Assembly (NCBI RefSeq): GCF_902713615.1
Contig: NC_052164.1
Location: 83,303,830 to 83,367,829, forward strand
Length of the DNA stretch: 64,000 bases
DNA from: Scyliorhinus canicula
Lineage: Eukaryota
Direction: 5' to 3'
Positions 22,657 through 59,650 of this stretch are shown in pieces. How positions within the stretch are numbered: position 1 is the first letter of the stretch; every line of letters begins with the position of its first letter. The notes beneath the pieces were generated by a model. That model saw only the letters and a program-made list of their open reading frames with translations, did no database searches and was not told where the DNA came from. A program made the translations under genes and the position numbers.

Positions 22657-24090
22657 AACATAAGAACTAGGAACAGGAGTAGGCTATCTGGCCCCTCGAG
22701 CCTGCTCCGCCATTCAATGAGATCATGGCTGATCTTTTGTGGACTCAGCTTCACTTTCCGGCCTGAACACCAGAACCATTAATCCCTTTATTCTTCAAAA
22801 AACTATCTATCTTAAAAACATTTAATGAAGGAGCCTCTACTACTTCACTGGGCAAGGAATTCCATAGATTCACAACCCTTTGGGTGAAGAAGTTCCTCCT
22901 AAACTCAGTCCTTAATCTACTTCCCCTTATTTTGAGGCTATGCCCCCTAGTTCTGCTTTCACCTGCCAGTGGAAACAACCTGCCCGCATCTATCCTATCT
23001 ATTCCCTTCATAATTTTATATGTTTCTATAAGAACCCCCTCATCCTTCTAAATTCCAACGAGTACAGTCCCAGTCTACTCAACCTCTCCTCGGAATCCAA
23101 CCCCTTCAGCTCTGGGATTAACCTAGTGAATCTCTTCACACCCTCCAGTGCCAGTACGTCCTTTCTCCAGTAAGGAGACCAAAACTGAACACAATACTCC
23201 AGGTGTGACCTCACTAACACATTATACAATTGCAGCATAACCTCCCTAGTCTTAAACTCCATCCCTTTAGTAATGAAGGACAAAATTCCATTTGCCTTCT
23301 TGATCACCTGTTGCACCTGTAAATCAACTTTTTAGCGACTCATGCACTAGCACACCCAGGTCTCTGCACAGCGGCATGTTTTAATATTTTATCATTTAAA
23401 TAATAATCCCGTTTGCTGTTATTCCTACCGAAATGGATAACCTCTCATTTGTCAACATTGTATTCCATCTGCCAGACCCTAGCCCATTCACTTAACCTGT
23501 CCAAATCCCTCTGCAGACTTCCAGTATCCTCTGCACTTTTCGCTTTACCACTCATCTTAGTGTCGTCTGCAAACTTGGACACATTGCCCTTGGTCCCCAA
23601 CTCCAAATCATCTATGTAAATTGTGAACAATTGTGGGCCCAACACTGATCCCTGAGGGACACCACTAGCTACTGATTGCCAACCAGAGAAACACCCATTA
23701 ATCCCCACTCTTTGCTTTCTATTAATTAACCAATCCTCTATTCATGCTACTACTTTACCCTTAATGCCATGCATCTTTATCTGATGCAGCAACCTTTTGT
23801 GTGGCACCTTGTCAAAGGCTTTCTGGAAATCCAGATATACCACATCCATTGGCTCCCCGATATCTACTGCACTGGTAATGTCCTCAAAAACTTCCACTAA
23901 ATTAGTTAGGCACGACCTGCCCTTTATGAACCCATGCTGCATCTGCCCAATGGGACAATTTGTATCCAGGTGCCTCGCTATTTCTTCCTTGATGATAGAT
24001 TCCAGCATCTTCCCTACTACCGAAGTTAAGCTCAATGGCCTATAATTACCCAGTCTCTGCCTACCTCCTTTTTTAAACAGTGGTGTCACG
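22657..24090 (-). mobile_element. 5'-truncated CR1 LINE (RT to 3' tail) inserted into a SINE
   Basis: ORF fragments YRPLSL, DFQKAFD, PQGSVLGP, FADD, YCVQFWSP; 3' tail at 22657. Confidence 0.92.
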
Positions 24091-33429: not shown

Positions 33430-34520
33430 TGAAGACACCATGCGCTGCATGGGCAAATTAAATGTTATCATGATGTTGGAGATAGGTGATGCTGCATATG
33501 CCCTGTGCATAGGTACGAATGCCATAGGTAGGATTAGAGAAATGATTCTACAAAGGGTTCATGAGCAACTAGGGAATAAATTAATAAGTAGAGCTATAAT
33601 GGTAACAATTTGAGCCATGAGAAAATTACATAGGGTAAATACGAAGAAAGTTGAATCTATGGTTCAAAGATTGACATGAGGAAATGTGATTCAATTCATG
33701 CGGTACTGGTACCAGTGCGGGAGGAAGAGGAAACTGCACTGTTGGGACAGCCGTCACCTGAACTTCTCTGGGTCCAGTCTACTGGCTAATCATATAACTA
33801 GAACTGCAGAGAGGACTTTAAACTGGATAGTGGGGTGGATAGTTCATGTGAAGGAAATTTTAGAAAGTTAAAGTGAAAAGGCAAGACAGCAGTGCAGGCG
33901 AGTGATTTGGGTAATGATAAACAGTGTGTTAAAGGAAGGGACAGAATGTACAAACATAAGAGTGCACCAGCAAATAAGATCAGAGCAGGGGAAATGGTTA
34001 AAAAAATGAAAGAACACAACATTTGTAACAAGATGAATAAATTGATAGCACAAATAGAAATAAAGTAGTATGATATGATGGCCCTTACAGAGTCACGGTT
34101 GCAAAGTGACAACGCAGGGAACTGAATATTCAAGGGTATTGGAAGGACAGGATGAAAGGGATGACTTAATAAGGACAGAGGATTTGCTAACTAACAGCAA
34201 ACAGTGTCTGGATAAATGGGCCATTTTCTGGTTGGCAAACTGTAACTAGTGAAGCGCTGCAGGGATCAGTACTACTGATGCCTCAACTATTTACGATCCA
34301 TATTAAGGACTTGAATGAAGGGACAAACTTTACTGTAGCCAAATTTACTGATGATACAAAGATAAGTAGGAAAGCAAGTTGTTAGGATGATACAACGAGC
34401 ATGAAAAGGGATATAGGTAGGTTAAGTGAGTGGGCAAAAGAATTGGAAGATGGAGTATATGCAAAAGTGTGAGGTTGTTCACTTTGGTAGGAAGAATAAA
34501 AAGGCAGAATATTATTTGCT
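33430..34520 (+). mobile_element. Old degenerate CR1 LINE spanning the ORF1 end and deleted ORF2
   Basis: WDSRHLNFSG...RTLN (ORF1 end), EN and RT remnants (QGSV, KFTDDTK). Confidence 0.75.
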
Positions 34521-36241: not shown

Positions 36242-38455
36242 TTTTTTTTTTAATAAACATTTTATTGAGGCATTTTTGGTATTGTAACAACAACAAAATA
36301 AACAATGTATAGGAAACTATAAACATATTGCAAAAGCCGTCTCCCTTCCTTACAGGTCCCACTTTATTAACCCCCTACTCTAAGCTAAAATAACTCCCAC
36401 CCCCTTCTGCTGACGATTAATTTTCCGCAAATAAGTCGATGAACGGTTGCCACATCGGGGCGAACCCTAACAGTGACCCTCTCAAAGCGAACTTGATTTT
36501 CTCCAGATCTGGTCCCCAAACAGAGAAAGCTAGCCATGTCCGATAGCCAGGTCTCCGACTTCGGGGGCTTTGAGTCCCTCCAAGCTAATAATTTCTGTCT
36601 CCGGGCTACCAGGGAAGCAAAGGCTAGAACGTGTCTCTTTCTCCTCCAGGATTCCCGGGTCTTCAGACATCCCGAAAATCGCCACCTCTGGACTTAGTGC
36701 CACCCTTGTTTTTAACACCGTGGACATGACATCTGCAATCCCCCTGCCAAAATCCCCTAAGCTTCGTACATGCCCAGGACATGTGGACATGGTTCGCTGG
36801 TCCTCCTGCACATTTTGCACACCTGTCTTCCACCCCAAAGAATCTGCTCATCCGGGCCACTGTCATGTGAGCCCGATGAACGACCTTGAATTATATCAGG
36901 CTGAGCCTGGCACATGTTGCGGACGCGCTGACTCTACTCAACGAGTCCGCCCATAGACCACTCTATCTCTCCTCCCAGCTCCTCCCACTTGCGCTTCAGC
37001 GCCTCGGTCTGCGTCTCCTTCGACCCCATAAGTTCCTTGTACATGTCAGAGACGCTCCCTTCTCCTACCCACCTCAGGAAACTACCCTGTCCTGAATCCC
37101 CGTTAGCGGTAGGAGCGGGAAGGTTGACACCTGTTTACGTAGGAAGTCCCGCACCTGCAGATACCTGAATTTGGTTCCCGTCGTCAACCCAAACTTCTCC
37201 TCCAGGCCCTCATACTCGGAAAGCTCCCCTCTATAAACATAACCCCTATCCTCTCAATCTCTGCTCTCCGCCATATCCAGAACACCCCATCCATACTTCC
37301 CGGGGCAAACCGGTGATTATTACAGATTGGGGACCAGACCGATGCTCCCTCTACTCCCACATGTCTCCTCCATTGCCCCCAGATTCTCAAGGCCGCCACC
37401 ACCACGGGGCTGGTGGAGTACCGTGCCGGTGGGAACGGCAGAGGTGCAATTACCAACACCCCCAGACTGGTGCCCTTGCATGAAGCCACCTCCATACGCT
37501 CCCATGCCGACCCCTACCCCACCACCCACTTCCTGATCATGGCTATATTCGCCGCCCAGTAATAGTTATTAAAATTTGGCAGGGCCAGCCCGCCCTCTCT
37601 CCTTTTTCGCCCAAGCATTACCTTCCTTACTCGCGGGATCTTGCCCGCCTAAACGAAGCCAGTGATCACTTTGTTGACACGTTTAAAAAAGGACTGCGGA
37701 ATAAAGATGGGGAGACACTGAAATACAAACAGGAATCTCGGGAGGACCATCATCTTCACCGTCTGCACCCTCCCAGCCAGTGACAACGGAAGCGCGTCTC
37801 ATCTCTGAAAATCATCCTTCACTTGGTCTACTAGTCGGGCCAAATTTAATTTATGCATCCGGTCCCATTCCCACGTCACTTGAATGCCTAGGTACCTAAA
37901 GCTTCCCCCTACTAATCTAAATGGCAGCTCCCCCAAACGCCTCTCCTGTCCCCTCGCCTGGACCGCAAACATCTCACTTTTCCCCATTTTTAGCTTATAC
38001 CCCGAAAACCGGCCAAATTCCCCTGGAATCCTCATGATTTCTTCCATCGCCTCTATTGGGTCCAATAAATACAGAAGCAGAAGTCTGCATAGAACGAGAC
38101 TCTGTGCTCCACTCCCCCCTCCTCCCCCCCCCCCCCCCCCCCCCCCCACCCCCCGCAGACCAGCCCCTTGAGGCTCTCAGAGCAATTGCCAACGGCTCCA
38201 TAGCCAGTGCGAACAACAGTGGTGGGGAGAGGGGTCATCCCTGTCTCGTCCCCCGGTGCAGTCTAAAATAGTCCAATATTGTCCGTACACTTGCCACCGG
38301 AGCCTGATACAGCAACCTGACCCAGTCAGTAAAGCCCCTCCCAAATCCGAACCGTCCCAGTACCTCCCACAGATAATCCCATTCTACCTGATCAAAAGCC
38401 TTTTCTGCATCCATTGCGATCACTACCTCCACCTCCCTACCTTCCGGGGGCATCA
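36242..38455 (-). mobile_element. Tx1/L1-clade LINE, 3' part of ORF2 (degenerate), host of the CR1 insertion
   Basis: Poly(A) tail at 36242; fragments DAEKAFDQVEW, RGTRQG, FRYLGI and a C-terminal CxxC..H...C motif (CAKCAGGPANHVHMSWAC). Confidence 0.88.
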
Positions 38456-38539
38456 TAAGACCATAAGACATAGGAGTGGAAGTAAGGCCATTCGGCCCAT
38501 CGAGTCCACTCCGCCATTCAATCATGGCTGATGGGCATT

Positions 38540-41500
38540 TCAACTCCACCTCCCAGCATTCTCCCCATAGCCCTTAATTCCTCGCGACATCAAGAATTTA
38601 TCTATCTCTGCCTTGAAGCCATTTAGCGTCCCGGCCTCCACTGCACTCTGCGGCAATGAATTCCACAGGCCCACCACTCTCTGGCTGAAGAAATGTCTCC
38701 GCATTTCTGTTTTGAATTTACCCCCTCTAATTCTAAGGCTGTGCCCACGGGTCCTCGACTCCTCGCCTAACGGAAACAGTTTCTTTGCGTCCATCCTTTC
38801 TAAGCCATGTATTATCTTGTAAGTTTCTATTAGATCTCCCCATAACCTTCTGAACTCCAATGAATACAATCCCAGGAACGCCAGCCGTTCCTCATATGCT
38901 AGACCCTCCATTCCAGGGATCATCCGTGTGAATCTCCGCTGGACACGCTCCAGTGCCAGTATGTCCTTCCTGAGATGTGGGGCCCAAAACTGGACACAGT
39001 ACTCCAAATGGGGCCTAACCAGAGCCTTATAAAGGCTCAGTAGCACATCGCTGCTTTTATATTCCAACCCTCTTGAGATAAATGACAACATAGCATTCGC
39101 TTTCTTAATCACGGATTCAACCTGCATGTTTACCTTTAGGGAATCCTCGACTAGCACTCCCAGATCCCTTTGTACTTTGGCATTATGAATTTTCTCACCG
39201 TTTAGAAAGTAGTCTATGCTTGGATTCTTTTTTCCAAAGTGCAAGACCTCACATTTTCTCACGTTGAAATGCATCAGCCATTTCCTGCACCACTCTCCCA
39301 AACTGTCTAGATCCTTCTGCAGCCTCCCCACTTCCTCAGCACTACCTGCCTGACCACCTAACTTCGTATCATCAGCAAACTTCGCTAGAATGCCCCCAGT
39401 CCCTTCATCCAGATCATTAATATATATGGTGAACAGCTGCGGCCCCAACACTGAACCCTGTGGGACACCGCTGGTCACCGGCTGCCATTCCGAAAAAGAA
39501 CCTTTTATCCCAACTCTCTGCCTTCTGTCAGACAGCCAATCCTCAACCCATGCCAGTAGCTCACCTCGAACACCATGGGCCCTCACCTTACTCAGCAGCC
39601 TCCTGTGTGGCACCTTATCAAAGGCCTTTTGGAAATCCAGATAGACCACATCCACTGGGTTTCCCTGGTCTAACCTACTTGTCACCTCCTCAAAGAATTC
39701 TAACAGGTTCGTCAGGCACGACCTCCCCTTACTAAATCCATGTTGACTTGTTCTAATCCGACCCTGCTCTTCCAAGAAATTAGAAATCTCATCCTTAACG
39801 ATCGATTCTAGAATTTTACCAACAACCGAGGTTAGGCTAATTGGCCTATAATTTTCCATCTTTTGTCTTGATCCTTTCTTGAACAAGGGGGTTACAACAG
39901 CGATCTTCCAATCGTCCGGGACTTTCCCTGACTCCAGTGATTTTTGAAAGATCTCAACCAACGCTTCCGCTATTTCTTCAGCCACCTCCCTCAGAACTCT
40001 AGGATGTAGCCCATCGGGGCCAGGAGATTTGTCAATTTTAAGACCTTTTAGCTTTTTTAGCACCATCTCTTTTGTAATGGCAACCATACTCAACTCAGCC
40101 CCCTGACCCTTTATAATTTTTGGGATATTACTAACGTCTTCCACTGTGAAGACAGATGCAAAGTACTTATTAAGTTCTCCAGCCATTTCCTCATCTCCCA
40201 TCACTAGCCTTCCAGAATCAGTTTGAATTGGCCCAATGTCTACTTTGGCCTGACGTTTGTTTCTTATGTATTGAAAGAAACTTTTACTATCATTTCTTAT
40301 ATTACTGGCTAGCCTGCCTTCATATTTGATCCTCTCCTTCCTTATTTGTCTCTTTGTTAACCTCTGTTTGTTTTTGTAGCCTTCCCAATCTTCTGATTTC
40401 CCGGTGCTTTTGGCCACTTTATAGGATCTCTCTTTTTCTTTGATACATTTCCTGACCTCCTTTGTCAGCCATGGCTGTCTAATCCCTCCCTGGATAATCT
40501 TTCTTTTCTTGGGGATGAACCTCTGTACAGTGTCCTCAATTATGCATACAAACTCCTGCCATTTTTGCTCTACTGTCTTCCCTGCTAGGGTCTGCTTCCA
40601 GTTGATTTTCACCAGTTCCTCTCTCATGCCCTCGTAATTACCTTTATTTAACTGTAACACCATTACATCCGATTTTGCCTTCTCTCTTTCAAACTGCAGA
40701 CTGAACTCAACCATATTATGATCGCTGCTTCCTAAGTGTTCCCTTACTTTAAGATCTTTAATAAAGTCTGGTTCATTACATAGCACTAGGTCCAGAATAG
40801 CCTGCTCCCTTGTGGGCTCCATGACAAGCTGTTCCAAAAAGCCATCTTGTAAGCATTCCATGAATTCCTTTACTTTGGATCCACTGGCTACATTATTTAC
40901 CCAATCCACCTGCATATTGAAGTCCCCCATGATCACTGTGACCTTGCCTTTCTGACATGCCTTTTCTATTTCCCGGTACATGTTGCGCCCCTGGTCCTGA
41001 CCACTGTTAGGCGGTCTGTACATAACTCCCATTATGGTTTTTTTGCCTTTGTGGTTCCTCAATTCTACCCACACAGACTCCACATCATCCGACCCTATGT
41101 CGTTTAGTGCCATAGATTTAATTTTGTTCTTAACTAACAAGGCAACCCCACCCCCTCGGCCCACCTCCCTGTCTTTTCGATAGGTTGTATATCCTTGGAT
41201 GTTTAACTGCCAGTCCTGAACCCCCTGCAGCCATGTCTCTGTGATGCCTACCACATCATAATCATTCACGATGATCTGTGCCATTAGTTCATCTACTTTG
41301 TTACAAATGCTACGAGCATTCAGGTAAAGTGCCTTAATGTTAACTTTCTTATCAGTACAGATATTGGAAGTCCTAAGATGTCCAAAGTTATCCTTCCTTT
41401 TTGTTGCATTCCTAGTCTGCCTCAAGCTTAAATCCACCTGCCTACATGTTATCCTCCTGCGTATCTTGCCATTTAACTCCCTGCTCCCTGTCGCTTTCAC
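38540..41500 (-). CDS. CR1 ORF2p: APE endonuclease + reverse transcriptase; no AUG at the start (frame is open from 41533)
   Basis: EN motifs YLNARS, ITETW, GDFN, SDH; RT motifs YRPISL, DFQKAFD, PQGSVLGP, FADD; 986 uninterrupted codons beginning GTG. Confidence 0.95.
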   Translation of the reverse strand: MKATGSRELNGKIRRRITCRQVDLSLRQTRNATKRKDNFGHLRTSNICTDKKVNIKALYLNARSICNKVDELMAQIIVNDYDVVGITETWLQGVQDWQLNIQGYTTYRKDREVGRGGGVALLVKNKIKSMALNDIGSDDVESVWVELRNHKGKKTIMGVMYRPPNSGQDQGRNMYREIEKACQKGKVTVIMGDFNMQVDWVNNVASGSKVKEFMECLQDGFLEQLVMEPTREQAILDLVLCNEPDFIKDLKVREHLGSSDHNMVEFSLQFEREKAKSDVMVLQLNKGNYEGMREELVKINWKQTLAGKTVEQKWQEFVCIIEDTVQRFIPKKRKIIQGGIRQPWLTKEVRKCIKEKERSYKVAKSTGKSEDWEGYKNKQRLTKRQIRKERIKYEGRLASNIRNDSKSFFQYIRNKRQAKVDIGPIQTDSGRLVMGDEEMAGELNKYFASVFTVEDVSNIPKIIKGQGAELSMVAITKEMVLKKLKGLKIDKSPGPDGLHPRVLREVAEEIAEALVEIFQKSLESGKVPDDWKIAVVTPLFKKGSRQKMENYRPISLTSVVGKILESIVKDEISNFLEEQGRIRTSQHGFSKGRSCLTNLLEFFEEVTSRLDQGNPVDVVYLDFQKAFDKVPHRRLLSKVRAHGVRGELLAWVEDWLSDRRQRVGIKGSFSEWQPVTSGVPQGSVLGPQLFTIYINDLDEGTGGILAKFADDTKLGGQAGSAEEVGRLQKDLDSLGEWCRKWLMHFNVRKCEVLHFGKKNPSIDYFLNGEKIHNAKVQRDLGVLVEDSLKVNMQVESVIKKANAMLSFISRGLEYKSSDVLLSLYKALVRPHLEYCVQFWAPHLRKDILALERVQRRFTRMIPGMEGLAYEERLAFLGLYSLEFRRLWGDLIETYKIIHGLERMDAKKLFPLGEESRTRGHSLRIRGGKFKTEMRRHFFSQRVVGLWNSLPQSAVEAGTLNGFKAEIDKFLMSRGIKGYGENAGRWS

Positions 41501-41517
41501 TTTCCCTTCCCCCCAAC

Positions 41518-42477
41518 TCAGAAGTTTAAAGTCCTACTGACCACCCTATTTATCCTCTTCGCTAGAACACTGGTTCCAGATCGGTTCAGGTGGAGACCGT
41601 CCCAACGGTACAGATCCCCCCGGTTCCAAAACTGATGCCAATGTCCCATGAAGTGGAATCCCTCTTTCCCACACCAATCCCTTAGCCACGTGTTTACTTC
41701 CCTAATTTTCCTATCCCTATGCCAATTGGCACGTGGCTCGGGCAGTAATCCAGAGATTATGACCCTTGAGGACCTGTACTTCAATTTTCTTCCTAGTGCT
41801 TGATAGTCCCCGAACAGGTCCTCCACCCTAGCTTTACCTATGTTGTTAGTCCCAACGTGGACCACAACAACTGGATCCTCCCCCTCCCGCTCCAGTATCC
41901 TTTCAAGCCGGTCAGAGATGTCCCGCACCCTGGCACCGGGCAGGCAACACACCATGCGAGACTCCCGATCCGGCTTGCATAGGATACTATCTGTCCCCCT
42001 AATTATAGAATCCCCTATAACAACTACTTGTCTTTTTACTCCCCCCTCTTGAATGGCCTTCTGCACCATGGTACCGTGGTCAGTTGGCTCATCCTGTCCA
42101 GAGCCCCTTTCCTCATCCATACAGGGAGCAAGAGTCTCATACCTGTTGGACAAGGTCAAGGGCTGAGGCTCCTGCACTCCTGAACTCAGGTTCCCTCTGC
42201 CTGCCTCACTTACAGTCACACTCTGATGTCCCTGATCAGTTACTGAATGTGAATTACTTAATCTCCCAGGTGTGACTGCCTCCTGAAACAAAGTGTCCAG
42301 GTAACTCTCCCCCTCCCGGATGTGCCGCAGTGTTTGAAGCTCAGACTCCAGATCATCAATTCTGAGCCGGAGATCTTCCAGCAACCAACACTTGCTGCAG
42401 ATGTGGTCATTGCCATTCACAAGGGGAACAGCCAGCTCCCACATCATACAGCTACAGCACATCACCTGCCCAGCCAT
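41518..42477 (-). CDS. CR1 ORF1p: Cys-rich Zn finger / leucine zipper plus SGNH esterase domain
   Basis: CxxC...CxxC with LxxxxxxL heptads; SGNH blocks VIGDS, PGA, VHVGTNN, DGLHLN; 319 aa. Confidence 0.93.
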   Translation of the reverse strand: MAGQVMCCSCMMWELAVPLVNGNDHICSKCWLLEDLRLRIDDLESELQTLRHIREGESYLDTLFQEAVTPGRLSNSHSVTDQGHQSVTVSEAGRGNLSSGVQEPQPLTLSNRYETLAPCMDEERGSGQDEPTDHGTMVQKAIQEGGVKRQVVVIGDSIIRGTDSILCKPDRESRMVCCLPGARVRDISDRLERILEREGEDPVVVVHVGTNNIGKARVEDLFGDYQALGRKLKYRSSRVIISGLLPEPRANWHRDRKIREVNTWLRDWCGKEGFHFMGHWHQFWNRGDLYRWDGLHLNRSGTSVLAKRINRVVSRTLNF

Positions 42478-42767
42478 CTCTGATTAGTTAATTAATTTAT
42501 TACTTTGTATAAATTTCAGTTAAAAAAACTTGGAGACCTCTGCTATAGTCTTTTCCAACCTAGTTCTGGTTAACAAATAAGAAAAAGAGAAATAATAATG
42601 TAATAAGGCACTCACCTGCTCACCCCAATGGGTCTTATTATTAGGTTAGAGGAGGAGGGCGGGTGGGAGACACTACACGTGTAGTGTCTCGGGTTTCCTC
42701 TCCACCAGAATTTATTAACTAGGGAGGGGTAAACCTTCCCAGAAGTCCACGGGACAAACTTCCTGTT

Positions 42768-43524
42768 CCCTGCAAAGGTAAGTAATTTAAACTTACCACT
42801 CACCTCCCGATAGGCTCAGCCCCTGCCGGTATCCAATGGCTGGCTGCTGCAATTGAAATTGACAAATCTACTCACCAGCTGAAGTATCCCAGCTCCCGCC
42901 GAAATCCAACTGACTGCAACCCCTGCAAAGGTAAGTAATTTAAACTTACCACTCACCTCCCGATAGGCTCAGCCCCTGCCGGTATCCAATGGCTGGCTGC
43001 TGCAATTGAAATTGACAAATCTACTCACCAGCTGAAGTATCCCAGCTCCCGCCGAAATCCAACTGACTGCAACCCCTGCAAAGGTAAGTAATTTAAACTT
43101 ACCACTCACCTCCCGATAGGCTCAGCCCCTGCCGGTATCCAATGGCTGGCTGCTGCAATTGAAATTGACAAATCTACTCACCAGCTGAAGTATCCCAGCT
43201 CCCGCCGAAATCCAACTGACTGCAACCCCTGCAAAGGTAAGTAATTTAAACTTACCACTCACCTCCCGATAGGCTCAGCCCCTGCCGGTATCCAATGGCT
43301 GGCTGCTGCAATTGAAATTGACAAATCTACTCACCAGCTGAAGTATCCCAGCTCCCGCCGAAATCCAACTGACTGCAACCCCTGCAAAGGTAAGTAATTT
43401 AAACTTACCACTCACCTCCCGATAGGCTCAGCCCCTGCCGGTATCCAATGGCTGGCTGCTGCAATTGAAATTGACAAATCTACTCACCAGCTGAAGTATC
43501 CCAGCTCCCGCCGAAATCCAACTG
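42768..43524 (-). repeat. Tandem array of ~4.9 identical 153-bp monomers forming the CR1 5' end
   Basis: TGCAAAGGTAAGT recurs at 42771, 42924, 43077, 43230 and 43383. Confidence 0.95.
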
Positions 43525-43690
43525 CATGATCACGTTTAACAACCTTCTTACATTGGCCACCAACTGCCTACCCTTAACAAATCCCGTCTGGTCCTCTCCA
43601 ATAAGGTCCTGAACACAATCCTCATGGACAAAATTCTGGCCAGCAATTTGGCATCTACATTCAGCAGGGATATCACCCTGTAGGATTCAC
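43525..43690 (-). mobile_element. Continuation of the Tx1/L1 element on the far side of the CR1
   Basis: SYRVISLLNVDAKLLARIL ... DQTGFVKGRQLVANVRRLLNVI, contiguous with the sequence at 38455. Confidence 0.85.
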
Positions 43691-44659
43691 AATTCACTGT
43701 ATCATTGATGTCTGCTGCCTCCATTAAGACTGGCTGCTTTTGGAAGAGTAATTGTAGCTTGTCAGTAACAAAGCCAAATAACTGTTTCTGCACCAATACT
43801 GGACCACAGCTGATCACTCCAGTTCCACTGAAAGTTCAAATTAAGAGCTTGGATCTAGAAATGTGACCTGTGCGATCTTCTTAGTATTACATGGAGCTCT
43901 TGCAATTTACATTTGGATTTTGAATAAAGGTAAAAAGTAGTTTCCAGTCCAGACATTCAGAGATTTCCCCAAGCACGGAGATGAGGAGAAATTCTTCACA
44001 GCGCCAGGGACCCGGGTTTGATTCTTGGCTTGGGTCACTGCCTATCAAGAGTCTGCACACTCTCCTCGTGTCTGCGTGGGTTCCCTCCGGGTGCTCCGGT
44101 TTCCTCCCACAAGTCCTGAAAGAGGTGCTTGTTACGCGAATTGGTCATTCTGAATTCTCCCTCAGTGTACCCGAACAGGCGCCCTAGTGTGGCGACTAGG
44201 GGATTTTCACAGTAATTTCACTGCAGTGTTAATGTTAGCCTACTTGTTACACTAATAAATATTAAATACACAATATTATATCTTGCTTCACAAGAGGCCT
44301 GTTTCTGGTAAAAAGGCATTTTGTTGACAGTGCCCAAGAGTATTGGAAATGGTTACTGAAGTTGCTTTTCCCCAGCAAGAAATTTGACCGTACTTCACTG
44401 GTTGTGAAGTGCTTTGAGCAGTCTTGAGTTTGTGAAAGGCACTGGGAGTCTCTTTATTTAGCTACATTCTCAGTCTGTCCAAGTACTCTAGAAAAAAAGC
44501 TGCTCATTTAATCCACACCTGTCAAAATCGCAGCGACAAAAAAAAAAATGTTCTTTCCTCCAAGCAACTGGATTTCTCACTTTTTCCACTGGGTTTTTGT
44601 TGTACATAGCACAGTATAAATACACACAAGATGATCAGACTTTTGCAAGGGGGGGGGGG

Positions 44660-48330: not shown

Positions 48331-48885
48331 CCGGCCTCGGGTCACTGTCGAGTTTGCATCTTCCCGTGTCTGCGTGGGTTTCCTCCAGGTGCTCCGGATC
48401 CCTCCCACGGCCCAAAGATGTGCAGGTTAGGTGAATTGGCCATGATCAGTTTCGCCATAGTGTCTAGGGAAGTGCAGGTTAGACTATAGGGTTATGAGGA
48501 CGTGGCTCGGGTCTCTTCTGAAGGGTTAGTGTAGACTTGATGGGCTGAATGGTCTCCTGCATTATAGGGATTTTGCGAGTGAAGAAGGCTAAGAAGGGAT
48601 TTGATGGAGATGTTCAAAATCATGAGGGGGCTGGGCAGAATAGATGGGGAGACACTGTTCCTGCTTGTAAAATGATCAAGTACGAGAGGGCACAGATTTA
48701 AAGTGATTTGGGAAAAAGAGATGTGAGGAAAAAACTTCTTTGTGTAATGGGTGCTTCAGGACTGGCATGCACTGTCTTGAATTGTGGTGGAGCATTAGAT
48801 GATGATTTTTATGTGCAAGGGCATAAGTAATTTGATGAGCCTGTGCAGATGGGCTGAATGGCCTCCTGTCCATAACAATTCTGTG
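48300..48885 (+). mobile_element. Degenerate V-SINE followed by a CR1 3' fragment in ANAPC13 intron 1
   Basis: V domain at ~48370-48440; CR1-like GDLMEMFKIMRG and tail ATGGGCTGAATGGCCTCCT. Confidence 0.65.
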
Positions 48886-57217: not shown

Positions 57218-57254
<37 letters not shown>

Positions 57255-58188
57255 CCAGAATAACACCGCTGAGCACACGCCCTGCTTTTTTTTTTTTGCT
57301 AAAGTATCAAAAGATCTAGACTTAAAACCTGGTTATGTTTTGGGGAGAAACATCAGGTATTCGGTCAGTACCTGACACTGCTGTTTTTTAGGAAATTTCT
57401 GTCCAGTGTGGTTACACATCATTCCACCACAAGATTTGCCACTTTATCCAGCACTTGACAGTTCTTTCCCAGATCCTTGAGTGTGCACAGTTGTGCCGTA
57501 TCTGCTGCAACCTTGTTGATGTGGAATGGTGTTATCTGCCATGGTTTCAATGGATAAGCATTGCCTCCCAGAATCTATATGCCTCCTCAACCCCTTCTCC
57601 TGAGGTAAGTCAAGGATATTAAAGTGGAAAAGGACATCAGTGGCTTGAACACTTGCCCAATGCTCTGGGCGTCAGGTAATTGCACATGTCAGTCAGGTCA
57701 GGACATAGTTAAGCTGTGATGTCAGATAGACTGTCAATAACTGATGGTCTTCGAGACACACTCAGACTTGGGAAGCATACTGGAGGATGATCAATATAAA
57801 CTGAATCAGTATTTACAAAAGATAATTTTAAAAATTGGGTGAAATTTGTGTAAATTAATGTGTAAACTATTACGGTCCCATAATATTCAGACTACTCAAG
57901 AATGTAAAGATCCAACTTGCAATAATGTAACATAAATAGTTTCAAACAGTTTCCCTCTGTACCTTCATGGTAAATCAAGCTTGCAATTAAGACATTTTGG
58001 CAAAAGCTTTCCAACCAGAATTTGTATTGATAGACTAGTTATGATACACCTCAAGATTCATGTTTTCGGCCATTAAGCTTGTATCACCTTCAGGGTTAAC
58101 CCAGAACATACTGTTGGCCAACTGCCCAGGAAACCGGGAGTAAAAGTACAATACCGCAGATGCTGAAAATCTGAGATAAAAAGATCAA

Positions 58189-58796: not shown

Positions 58797-59650
58797 TCAC
58801 AGAATACTACAGTACAAGAGAGGCCCTTTGGCCCATCGAGTCTGCGCCAACGCAGTAAAAAGGCCCTGACCTGCCCACCTAATCCCACTTTCCAGCACTT
58901 GGCCCATATCCTTGAATGTTATGTTGTGGCAAGCACTCATCCAGGTACGTTTTAAAGGATGTGAGGCTTCCCGCCTTTACCACCCTCTCAGGCACTGTAT
59001 TCCAGACCGTCACCACTCTCTGGGTAAAAAAGGTTTTCCTCAAATCCCACCAAACCTCCAACCTCTCACTTTGAACTTATGTCCCCTTGTTACTAACCCT
59101 TCAACTAAGGAACAGCTGTTACCCCTCATAATCTTGTACACCTCAATCAGGTCACCCCTCAGTCTTCTCTGCCCCAGAACAAACAACCCAATCCTATCCA
59201 ACCTCTTTATAACGTAAATGTTCCATCCCAGGCAACATCCTGGTGAATCTTCTCTGCACCCCCTCCAGTGCAATTGCACCCATTCTATAATGTGGCGACC
59301 AGAATTGCACACGGTACTCCAGCTGTGGCCTCACCAAAGTTCTATACAGCTCCATTATGACCTCCCTGCTTTTGTAATCTATGCCCCGATTGATAAAAGC
59401 AAGTGTCCCAAAAGTATTTTTCACCACCCTATTAACCTGCCCTTCTGCCTTCAGAAATCCAACGTGTATCACCTCACGCTTTTTAGGGTTAAATTCTACC
59501 TGTCACTTATCCGCCTATTTGACCATCCTGCCTATATCTTCCTGTAACCCAAGACACTCAACCTCACTCTTAACCACCCGGCCAATCTTAGTGTCATCCA
59601 CAAACCTACTGATCGTAGCCCCCACTTAGTCATCTATGTCATATATATAA
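58797..59650 (-). mobile_element. CR1 LINE 3' portion; continues at ~63096-63165 after the Penelope insertion
   Basis: LVRPQLEYRVQFWSP, LRGDLIEVYK, FFTQRVV and a CR1 3' tail. PVTSGIPQ...IYI on the right flank continues into ...DIDD...VDDTK on the left flank. Confidence 0.88.

What the first reader, a model, noticed from the sequence alone, without database searches (positions are those of the whole stretch)
41479..41536. Candidate programmed -1 ribosomal frameshift fusing CR1 ORF1 (esterase) to ORF2 (EN-RT)
Seen on the - strand: ORF1 ends ...AGT AGG ACT TTA AAC TTC TGA, so the heptamer U_UUA_AAC (41530-41524) is in the correct X_XXY_YYZ phase, one codon before the stop. The -1 frame reads TAG GAC TTT AAA CTT CTG AGT TGG GGG GAA GGG AAA GTG AAA GCG... 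It opens only 3 nt before the heptamer and runs unbroken into ORF2, so the ~15-nt overlap is essentially the slippery site. ORF2's first AUG (41284, residue 73) lies downstream of the first endonuclease motif (YLNARS), so AUG initiation would remove a conserved EN residue. Nine nt after the heptamer come G6-AA-G3-N15-G3-N4-G3 tracts, a possible G-quadruplex stimulator. Established: UUUAAAC is the coronavirus-type -1 slippery sequence, and mammalian L1 makes ORF2 by termination-reinitiation rather than fusion. Inference: this CR1 makes a ~1310-aa Gag-Pol-like ORF1-ORF2 fusion. I cannot confirm whether this has been shown for CR1.
Basis: partly seen in the sequence, partly recalled or inferred. 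Interest (0 to 1): 0.88.

Follow-up and report, generated by a model that had tools for sequence, protein, structure and literature searches.

The report
Conserved -1 frameshift site in CR1 LINEs
An intact CR1 retrotransposon ends its first gene on a classic ribosome-slip signal (UUUAAAC), and the same kind of signal sits at the same spot in CR1 elements of rays, eels, turtles and birds, so these LINEs probably make their endonuclease/reverse transcriptase as a Gag-Pol-like ORF1-ORF2 fusion by -1 frameshifting.

Summary
On the minus strand, ORF1 (GDSL esterase, 42477-41518) ends ACT TTA AAC TTC TGA. The heptamer U_UUA_AAC (41530-41524) is in X_XXY_YYZ phase. ORF2 (endonuclease and reverse transcriptase) lies in the -1 frame, which opens 3 nt before the heptamer and runs to 38540.

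The frameshift reading is strongly supported by comparison, not by experiment.
- Of 93 ORF1 homologue clusters (50% identity) with a complete tail, 54 end in LN*, QGN* or KN*.
- DNA fetched for ten relatives gave T_TTA_AAC five times, C_TTA_AAC once (a decayed copy), G_GGA_AAC once and A_AAA_AAC twice. All are in phase, seven of the nine are followed directly by the stop, and ORF2 is always in -1.
- The tenth relative and one further locus (FFR* tails) carry a T6 run with ORF2 in +1.
- Where the -1 frame reaches the endonuclease motif, no AUG precedes it, except in the decayed swallow copy.
- TTA is otherwise a rare Leu codon in most of these ORFs.
- Hosts include an electric ray, an eel, a turtle and a swallow.

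A run of four or more G lies 8-12 nt downstream in 9 of 10 lineages. A four-tract G-quadruplex is not conserved and no stable fold is predicted, so the stimulator is unresolved.

No report of this was found in the literature held here. Key older CR1 papers were not held.

The parts
38454..43524 (-). Full-length, apparently intact CR1-type LINE of about 5.07 kb, inserted inside an older L1-like reverse-transcriptase ORF on the same strand
   Evidence: The flanks at 43525-43700 and 38300-38453 read as one interrupted RT ORF. The 3' end carries a TCTTATGG-type short repeat. Both ORFs are unbroken. The ends are approximate to a few bases.
42768..43524 (-). 5' UTR array of five 153-bp monomers, 100% identical to each other
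   Evidence: Self-BLAST and the sequence. The identity implies a very young copy.
41518..42477 (-). ORF1: 319 aa with an N-terminal Cys-rich and coiled region plus a GDSL/SGNH esterase. Stop TGA at 41520-41518.
   Evidence: Lipase_GDSL_2, 1e-12. (PDB 4c1b, ORF1-encoded esterase, 5e-28).
41524..41530 (-). Slippery heptamer U_UUA_AAC in the ORF1 phase, one sense codon before the ORF1 stop
   Evidence: No variant is listed among hundreds of family contigs at 80% likeness. The equivalent heptamer is present in relatives.
41534..41536 (-). TAG that closes the -1 frame upstream and limits any frame change to a 13-nt overlap
41479..41514 (-). G-rich tract G6-AA-G3-N15-G3-N4-G3, starting 9 nt after the heptamer. 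The first G run (plus a nearby G3) is the conserved part.
   Evidence: a run of four or more G at +8 to +12 in 9 of 10 lineages; no significant fold.
38540..41533 (-). ORF2 in the -1 frame, 997 open codons with APE-type endonuclease, reverse transcriptase and CR1 C-terminal domain. Decoding after the slip would begin at CUU, 41524-41522.
41309..41326 (-). First endonuclease motif, YLNARS
   Evidence: The same motif follows the linker in relatives.
41282..41284 (-). First AUG of the ORF2 frame. It lies downstream of the first endonuclease motif.
   Evidence: first Met at codon 83 of the open frame.
33817..33823 (+). The same T_TTA_AAC heptamer, in phase, at the ORF1 end of an old, decayed CR1 copy. 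Its ORF1 remnant is 33455-33826 in frame 2 and its endonuclease remnant is 34018-34107 in frame 1, which is -1. A GGGG run lies 8 nt downstream.

Best explanation
The element is a young, intact CR1 LINE whose ORF2 protein (endonuclease and reverse transcriptase) is made by programmed -1 ribosomal frameshifting. Ribosomes translating ORF1 reach U_UUA_AAC with tRNA-Leu in the P site and tRNA-Asn in the A site. A minority slip back one base to UUU_AAA and continue in the ORF2 frame (CUU CUG AGU UGG ...). The product is a Gag-Pol-like ORF1-ORF2 fusion of about 1312 aa. The majority terminate two codons later and give free ORF1p. The ORF1 stop placed at or next to the heptamer, and a conserved G-rich tract 8-12 nt downstream, probably set the efficiency. 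How they do so is not established. Shown here: the anatomy of the site and its conservation, including at synonymous positions and through replacement by other canonical heptamers. Inferred: that slippage occurs, its efficiency, and that the fusion is the functional ORF2 product.
For: (1) Anatomy: the heptamer is in phase, ORF2 is in -1, the overlap is 13 nt, and no AUG lies before the first endonuclease motif.
(2) Protein tails: a phmmer search of ORF1 against 1.84 billion cluster representatives gave 2874 hits. Of the 93 among the top 150 with a complete tail after the DGxH motif, 42 end LN*, 8 end QGN* and 4 end KN*, and 6 more have xKN followed by 10-12 residues.
(3) DNA behind those tails matched predictions made from the peptides. 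T_TTA_AAC occurs in L001 (snapping turtle), L004 (electric ray), L006 (cutthroat eel), L009 and L012. C_TTA_AAC occurs in decayed swallow copies (L007, L008). G_GGA_AAC occurs in L003. A_AAA_AAC occurs in L005 and L010. All are in phase. The stop follows immediately in 7 of these 9 relatives (the window copy has one sense codon before its stop). ORF2 is in -1 in all 10 lineages, counting the window. The -1 frame opens 13-40 nt before the ORF1 stop, and 100 nt before it in L010 (hosts).
(4) Codon level: TTA is 0-2 of 26-34 Leu codons in the body of five of the six LN-type ORF1s. Given the peptide x-L-N, the joint chance of NNT-TTA-AAC in all six is about 5e-13 (my arithmetic on the counts).
(5) Within this genome, hundreds of family contigs down to below 90% identity vary at 22 sites in 41537-41583, but no variant is listed in 41523-41536. 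Diverged subfamilies read TTTAAAC-TAG followed by a G6 run.
(6) An old copy in the window with 32% ORF1 identity keeps the in-phase heptamer and the -1 ORF2.
(7) On an ORF1 tree the tail types are clade-structured, with LN on both sides of the midpoint root and GN and KN in sub-clades. This looks like function-preserving turnover of the slip site.
(8) No joints and no indels at the heptamer appear in contigs from DNA runs and runs guessed to be RNA, so splicing or templated slippage is not indicated.
Against: There is no direct evidence of the transframe protein. No stable pseudoknot or hairpin is predicted downstream in any lineage: z is +0.47 for the window, and the other lineages fall within shuffled controls. 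A bare UUUAAAC usually frameshifts only weakly. The swallow copies have C rather than U at the first heptamer position, though their ORF2 is broken. About a third of the cluster representatives end otherwise. Many are scattered singletons that look like decayed copies. One clade (FFR*-type) has ORF2 in the +1 frame with a T6 run, and ZfL2-1-like L2 esterase ORF1s lack the motif. The mechanism is therefore not universal among esterase LINEs. Human L1 shows that a LINE ORF2 can be translated without an AUG by another route (PMC5972666).
Confidence: 0.78

Rival explanations
1. Termination-reinitiation, as proposed for human L1 and shown for silkworm SART1. Ribosomes finish ORF1 at the stop, and the 40S subunit is retained, perhaps tethered by the downstream G-rich tract. 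It restarts in the -1 frame at a non-AUG codon, giving separate ORF1p and ORF2p.
For: The ORF1 stop is positionally conserved right at the junction, and a conserved linear motif lies nearby. L1 and SART1 precedents are described in PMC5972666 and PMC2881922. No strong frameshift-stimulating fold is predicted.
Against: It does not explain why the last two ORF1 codons plus the preceding wobble base form a canonical X_XXY_YYZ heptamer in phase, in three interchangeable versions, against codon usage. It does not explain why the ORF2 frame is always -1. No conserved AUG or near-cognate codon follows the stop across lineages. In L010 the heptamer is kept although the stop lies 11 codons further on.
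Confidence: 0.1
2. The heptamer is incidental. The x-L-N C-terminus is conserved for ORF1p function. ORF2 is translated independently by leaky scanning, internal entry or initiation at GUG 41500 or AUG 41284, or from a separate subgenomic or spliced RNA.
For: N318 is nearly invariant in the ORF1 alignment. A GUG at 41500 and an AUG at 41284 exist in this copy.
Against: The rare TTA codon, AAC and a matching preceding wobble base recur in every LN lineage fetched. Tail replacements are exactly those that give other slippery heptamers: QGN gives G_GGA_AAC and SKN gives A_AAA_AAC. The linker of 50-70 codons between the heptamer and the endonuclease domain is open in every undecayed lineage, yet has no conserved start. 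The first Met follows the first endonuclease motif or is hundreds of codons away. No joints appear in the contigs.
Confidence: 0.07
3. Frame change at the nucleic-acid level: slippage by RNA polymerase or reverse transcriptase on the A/T run produces a subset of RNAs with ORF1 and ORF2 in frame.
For: AAAAAAC sites (L005, L010) and the T6 sites of the FFR* clade (L002, L011) are homopolymer runs of the kind that can slip.
Against: TTTAAAC and GGGAAAC have runs of only three bases, too short for efficient polymerase slippage. No insertion or deletion at the heptamer is seen in contigs from four runs, although contigs drop rare variants.
Confidence: 0.03

Closest known systems
Gag-Pol -1 frameshifting of retroviruses and LTR retrotransposons (for example MMTV A_AAA_AAC, HIV-1 U_UUU_UUA, many Drosophila LTR elements, and the domesticated PEG10)
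   Same: An in-phase X_XXY_YYZ heptamer lies at the end of the structural or accessory ORF. The polymerase ORF is in -1. The expected product is a minority fusion protein that sets the ratio of the two proteins. Atkins et al. 2016 (PMC5009743) summarise this for LTR elements and PEG10.
   Different: This is a non-LTR LINE with an esterase ORF1, not Gag. No pseudoknot or hairpin is predicted. The 0-frame stop abuts the heptamer. That review lists only HeT-A and TART among non-LTR elements. The individual heptamers are quoted from memory.
Coronavirus and arterivirus ORF1a/1b signal (U_UUA_AAC plus pseudoknot)
   Same: Identical slippery heptamer, with tRNA-Leu and tRNA-Asn as the slipping pair.
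   Different: The viral signals depend on a strong pseudoknot 5-7 nt downstream (established knowledge). Here there is only a purine-rich G tract 8-12 nt downstream.
Luteovirus and dianthovirus -1 frameshift sites where the 0-frame stop follows the heptamer directly (BYDV GGGUUUU-UAG, RCNMV GGAUUUU-UAG; from memory)
   Same: A heptamer immediately followed by UAG or UAA, as in 7 of 9 CR1 relatives.
   Different: The plant viruses use adjacent stem-loops plus long-range pairing. The heptamers and hosts differ.
Protein-dependent frameshift stimulators (PRRSV nsp1beta/PCBP on a C-rich motif about 11 nt downstream; cardiovirus 2A on a stem-loop 13-14 nt downstream; from memory)
   Same: A short, conserved, largely unstructured motif at a longer-than-usual spacing from the slip site.
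   Different: The CR1 motif is G-rich, and no binding protein is known. This is a resemblance, not a tested property.
ORF2 translation in L1 and SART1 LINEs (termination-reinitiation, UAAUG coupling)
   Same: A bicistronic LINE RNA, with ORF2 expression coupled to ORF1 translation (PMC2881922, PMC5972666).
   Different: Those give separate proteins and need no slippery heptamer. L1 has a 63-nt spacer and SART1 has an overlapping stop-start. Neither feature is present here.

Membership tests
Canonical eukaryotic -1 programmed ribosomal frameshift signal | X_XXY_YYZ heptamer in the 0-frame phase | tested here: met
   T|TTA|AAC at 41530-41524. In-phase heptamers are present in 9 relatives.
Canonical eukaryotic -1 programmed ribosomal frameshift signal | The downstream ORF is in the -1 frame and open across the slip site, with a short overlap | tested here: met
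   The -1 frame opens 3 nt before the heptamer and runs for 997 codons. The same holds in relatives, with 13-40 nt of overlap (100 nt in L010).
Canonical eukaryotic -1 programmed ribosomal frameshift signal | A stable 3' RNA structure (pseudoknot or stem-loop) 5-9 nt downstream | tested here: not met
   The window fold is -18.7 kcal/mol against a shuffle mean of -19.9 (z +0.47). None of 10 lineages exceeds shuffles, with or without G-quadruplex energies.
Canonical eukaryotic -1 programmed ribosomal frameshift signal | Phylogenetic conservation of the site beyond what the encoded peptide requires | tested here: met
   The rare TTA codon, AAC and the matching wobble base recur in all LN lineages. 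Substitution is by other canonical heptamers. No variant is listed within the family.
Canonical eukaryotic -1 programmed ribosomal frameshift signal | A measured transframe product | not testable with these tools
   Needs a reporter assay, ribosome profiling or mass spectrometry.
CR1-clade LINE with esterase-type ORF1 | ORF1 with an SGNH/GDSL esterase domain | tested here: met
   Pfam PF13472, 1e-12. PDB 4c1b, ORF1-encoded esterase, 5e-28.
CR1-clade LINE with esterase-type ORF1 | ORF2 with an APE endonuclease and a reverse transcriptase | tested here: met
   PF03372 and PF00078.
CR1-clade LINE with esterase-type ORF1 | A 3' end with a short microsatellite-like repeat instead of poly(A) | tested here: met
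   The 3' UTR ends in two TCTTATGG-type units at 38470-38454, with no A tail. An octamer repeat is described for CR1 in PMC2612034 (abstract).
Termination-reinitiation LINE (L1/SART1 type) | A start codon overlapping or shortly after the ORF1 stop | tested here: not met
   No AUG for 83 codons in this copy. No conserved AUG or near-cognate codon in relatives.
G-quadruplex-stimulated frameshifting (so far synthetic only, PMC5009743) | Four G tracts able to form an intramolecular quadruplex at the right spacing, conserved with the site | tested here: inconclusive
   Four G3+ tracts are present in the window copy. Relatives have only one or two conserved tracts, with the third and fourth absent or far away. 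The predicted quadruplex energy is marginal.

The most novel reading that the evidence does not exclude
Canonical CR1 LINEs, the dominant retrotransposons of birds, reptiles and many fishes, have for several hundred million years expressed ORF2 as an ORF1-ORF2 fusion. They do so through a module of slippery heptamer (XXXAAAC), abutting stop codon and a linear G-run 8-12 nt downstream. This stimulator would be neither a pseudoknot nor a hairpin. It might be a natural G-quadruplex in some families, or a G-tract bound by a host factor or by ORF1p. Sister clades have swapped heptamers, and one clade appears to have switched to a +1 arrangement on a U6 run.
Probability: 0.4. Interest if true: 0.9.

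Novelty: new variant of a known kind. Interest (0 to 1): 0.8.

Why it matters
How LINEs translate ORF2 is a long-standing question. The accepted models, from L1 and SART1, involve reinitiation and separate proteins. A conserved canonical -1 frameshift site in CR1 would add a second, retrovirus-like solution within non-LTR elements.

It would predict a covalent ORF1-ORF2 fusion, which is a simple physical basis for cis-preference and for a fixed ORF1p:ORF2p ratio. It would also give a directly testable 120-nt cassette.

The conserved G-run may be an unusual frameshift stimulator. Atkins et al. 2016 state that natural use of G-quadruplexes for frameshifting was not yet known.

In practice, TE annotation pipelines could use the heptamer-stop-G-run module to recognise intact CR1 copies and to join ORF1 and ORF2 correctly.

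Tried and rejected
1. Watson-Crick stimulator. Folding 136 nt from the site and 75 nt downstream in ten lineages gave nothing beyond shuffled controls, so a conserved hairpin or pseudoknot is rejected.

2. Conserved four-tract G-quadruplex. This is not supported outside this family.

3. Splicing or RNA-level indels. No joints and no indel at the heptamer appear in contigs of the runs laid, including runs guessed to be RNA. The only indels listed are at 41494 and 41508, in single contigs. Contigs miss rare variants, so this is weak negative evidence.

4. Metagenome scans for more junction DNA. The first alignment was too diverse to search with. The second scan found no confirmed relative.

5. 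P0002, the single E-L-N tail that cannot give U_UUA, could not be fetched.

6. Literature. Ten full-text searches and several papers were read. None describes a slippery heptamer or -1 frameshifting for CR1 or L2. That includes the 2016 recoding review and a 2026 survey of CR1-group elements. Kapitonov and Jurka 2003 and Kojima et al. 2005 were requested but are not held. Haas et al. 1997, Kajikawa et al. 1997 and Poulter et al. 1999 were not looked up. Earlier remarks on a -1 overlap cannot be excluded.

7. ZfL2-1. The PDB construct 4c1b stops before the natural C-terminus. ZfL2-1-like ORF1 tails (DGLHP type) do not end in LN, so that experimentally active element is not an obvious test bed.

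Full report
**What is at the site.** On the minus strand the window holds a full-length CR1-type LINE at about 43524-38454.
- The 5' UTR contains five 153-bp monomers that are 100% identical to each other.
- ORF1 runs 42477-41518 and encodes 319 aa.
- A long ORF follows in the -1 frame and ends at 38540.
- An 86-nt 3' UTR ends in two TCTTATGG-type units.
- The element sits inside an older L1-like reverse-transcriptase ORF.
- ORF1 carries a GDSL/SGNH esterase: Pfam PF13472 at 1e-12, and PDB 4c1b, an ORF1-encoded LINE esterase, at 5e-28.
- ORF2 carries Exo_endo_phos and RVT_1.

- ORF1 ends ACT TTA AAC TTC TGA, so U_UUA_AAC (41530-41524) is in X_XXY_YYZ phase.
- The -1 frame is closed by a TAG at 41536-41534 and is then open for 997 codons.
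- The first AUG of that frame, at 41284, lies after the YLNARS endonuclease motif (41326-41309).
- The G tracts G6-AA-G3-N15-G3-N4-G3 start 9 nt after the heptamer.
- TTTAAAC as a bare word is frequent in this AT-rich window, 36 matches against 17 expected. The case therefore rests on phase, position and conservation.

**Conservation within the genome.** Contigs of four public runs of the same organism were laid on the junction at 80% likeness.
- Hundreds of family members aligned, many below 90% identity.
- With a 1% threshold, variants are listed at 22 places in 41537-41583, but none in 41523-41536, which contains the heptamer.
- Many diverged contigs stop aligning exactly at 41523. Their loose ends read, on the element's strand, TAG directly after TTTAAAC, followed after a few bases by a G6-7 run.
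- Caveat: variants very close to alignment ends are not listed, so this is supportive rather than decisive.
- A decayed CR1 copy elsewhere in the window (ORF1 remnant 33455-33826, 32% identity) keeps T_TTA_AAC in phase at 33817-33823. Its endonuclease remnant is one frame back, and a GGGG run lies 8 nt downstream.

**Conservation across lineages: proteins.**
- ORF1 was searched against 1.84 billion representatives of 50%-identity clusters and gave 2874 hits.
- Of the best 150, 93 have a complete tail after the conserved DGxH motif. Of these, 42 end LN*, 8 end QGN* and 4 end KN*. Six more have xKN followed by 10-12 residues.
- The residue before LN is almost always one that has an NNU codon. 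The single exception is ELN.

**Conservation across lineages: DNA.** From these tails I predicted U_UUA_AAC, G_GGA_AAC and A_AAA_AAC, then fetched DNA.
- LN tails gave GCT TTA AAC TAG (L001), GGT TTA AAC TAA (L004), TAT TTA AAC TAG (L006), TCT TTA AAC TAG (L009) and TGT TTA AAC TAA (L012).
- Two decayed copies gave GCC TTA AAC TAG (L007, L008).
- A QGN tail gave CAG GGA AAC TAG (L003).
- SKN tails gave TCA AAA AAC TAG (L005) and TCA AAA AAC followed by 11 more codons (L010).
- In every case ORF2, recognised by the Y/C-x-N-A-R/H-S endonuclease motif where the contig reaches it, is in the -1 frame.
- That frame opens only 13-40 nt before the ORF1 stop, or 100 nt in L010.
- In the intact copies no Met precedes the endonuclease motif (L009, first Met at codon 59; L012, 167; L010, 333). 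Only the decayed swallow copy has one earlier.
- Named hosts are Narcine bancroftii, Synaphobranchus kaupii, Macrochelys suwanniensis and Hirundo rustica. The arrangement therefore spans cartilaginous fish, teleosts, turtles and birds.

**Is it more than peptide conservation?**
- In the ORF1 bodies, TTA is 0-2 of 26-34 Leu codons in five of the six LN-type elements. AAC is roughly half or less of the Asn codons, and T is 19-37% of third positions.
- Given x-L-N, the joint chance of NNT-TTA-AAC in all six is about 5e-13 by my arithmetic. At 30-45% protein identity, synonymous sites are saturated, so treating the lineages as independent is reasonable.
- Other in-phase XXXYYYZ sites number only 0-5 per ORF1.
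- On a maximum-likelihood tree of 91 esterase domains, the tail types are clustered: 24 changes against 44 in shuffles. LN dominates one well-supported clade (34 of 42 rows) and also occurs on the other side. GN and KN occupy sub-clades.
- This is what function-preserving turnover among slippery heptamers that share the A_AAC A-site would look like.

**Downstream element.**
- No lineage has a predicted fold better than shuffled sequence.
- A run of four or more G starts 8-12 nt after the heptamer in 9 of 10 lineages, and in the old window copy. It is usually followed 1-4 nt later by GGG.
- Such runs occur only about 3 times per kb elsewhere in these elements.
- In the -1 frame the run encodes a Gly, often within [W/Q/K/R]-G-x-G. 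That Gly codon is mostly GGG and is mostly preceded by G (my count from the sequences). This hints at an RNA-level constraint, but a peptide constraint cannot be excluded.
- Four G3 tracts exist only in this copy and its near relatives. The G-quadruplex idea is therefore possible for this family but is not the conserved feature.
- The spacing is longer than for classical structures. It resembles protein-dependent stimulators, but that comparison is from memory and was not tested.

**Mechanism and rivals.** The best reading is tandem -1 slippage on XXXAAAC, giving an ORF1-ORF2 fusion of 318 + 994 residues, with the abutting stop and the G tract modulating efficiency (confidence about 0.78).
- Termination-reinitiation explains the conserved stop. 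It does not explain the phased heptamer, its three interchangeable forms, the invariable -1 frame, or L010, where the stop is distant.
- Independent initiation is contradicted by the always-open, start-less linker.
- Polymerase slippage is implausible for runs of three bases and has no contig support.

**Limits.**
- About a third of the tails are different.
- An FFR*-type clade nested among the QGN elements has xxG TTT TTT CGN TAG, with ORF2 in the +1 frame.
- ZfL2-1-like L2 ORF1s lack the motif.

**Novelty.** Reviews of recoding (PMC5009743) and of LINE biology (PMC2881922, PMC5972666), the ORF1 surveys (PMC4120745, PMC3905857) and a 2026 CR1-group survey (PMC13343379) do not mention a slippery site or frameshifting for CR1. 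Ten full-text searches found nothing either. Two older CR1 and LINE papers were not held and others were not looked up, so a passing remark on a -1 overlap may exist. I rate this as a new variant of a known kind: canonical -1 frameshifting, newly evidenced in a major non-LTR clade with an atypical downstream element.

Noticed in passing
L002:981-1006; L011:1226-1252: FFR*-type esterase ORF1s end xxG TTT TTT CGN TAG. ORF2 is in the +1 frame, not -1, and that frame opens 23 nt before the stop, so the overlap holds just the T6 run. On the ORF1 tree this clade nests inside the QGN (G_GGA_AAC) clade. This suggests a switch from a -1 to a +1 (or -2) recoding site.
   Followed up: partly
window 42768-43524 (-): The 5' UTR of the CR1 is built from five 153-bp monomers that are 100% identical, reminiscent of mouse L1 promoter monomers. 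The element starts mid-monomer.
   Followed up: partly
window 38300-38453 and 43525-43700 (-): The CR1 is inserted in an older L1-like reverse-transcriptase ORF on the same strand (motifs ISLLNVDAKLLA...DQTGF upstream and DAEKAFDQVEWDYL downstream). ATG appears on both sides of the insertion, so the target-site duplication is at most a few bases.
   Followed up: no
window 38114-38163: A run of about 45 nt that is almost pure G on the minus strand, inside the flanking L1-like sequence. A similar run lies at 57220-57258.
   Followed up: no
window 22754-24089 (-), 58885-59625 (-), 34206-34518 (+), 48577-48792 (+): Further fragments of CR1-like ORF2 at 35-65% amino-acid identity to the intact copy. 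None includes an ORF1-ORF2 junction, except the old copy at 33455-34107.
   Followed up: partly
L007 and L008 (Hirundo rustica contig QRBI01000093.1, about 20 kb apart, opposite orientation): Two copies with identical ORF1 protein and the same junction, C_TTA_AAC TAG, in inverted orientation. Their ORF2 frames break at different places. This is probably a recent inverted segmental duplication of a dead CR1.
   Followed up: no
all junction loci: After the slip the -1 frame reads F/G/K-K-L and then, 3-5 codons on, a [W/Q/K/R]-G-x-G motif in nearly every lineage. It is unclear whether this is a conserved N-terminal peptide of the ORF2 part or only the translation of the conserved G-rich RNA.
   Followed up: partly
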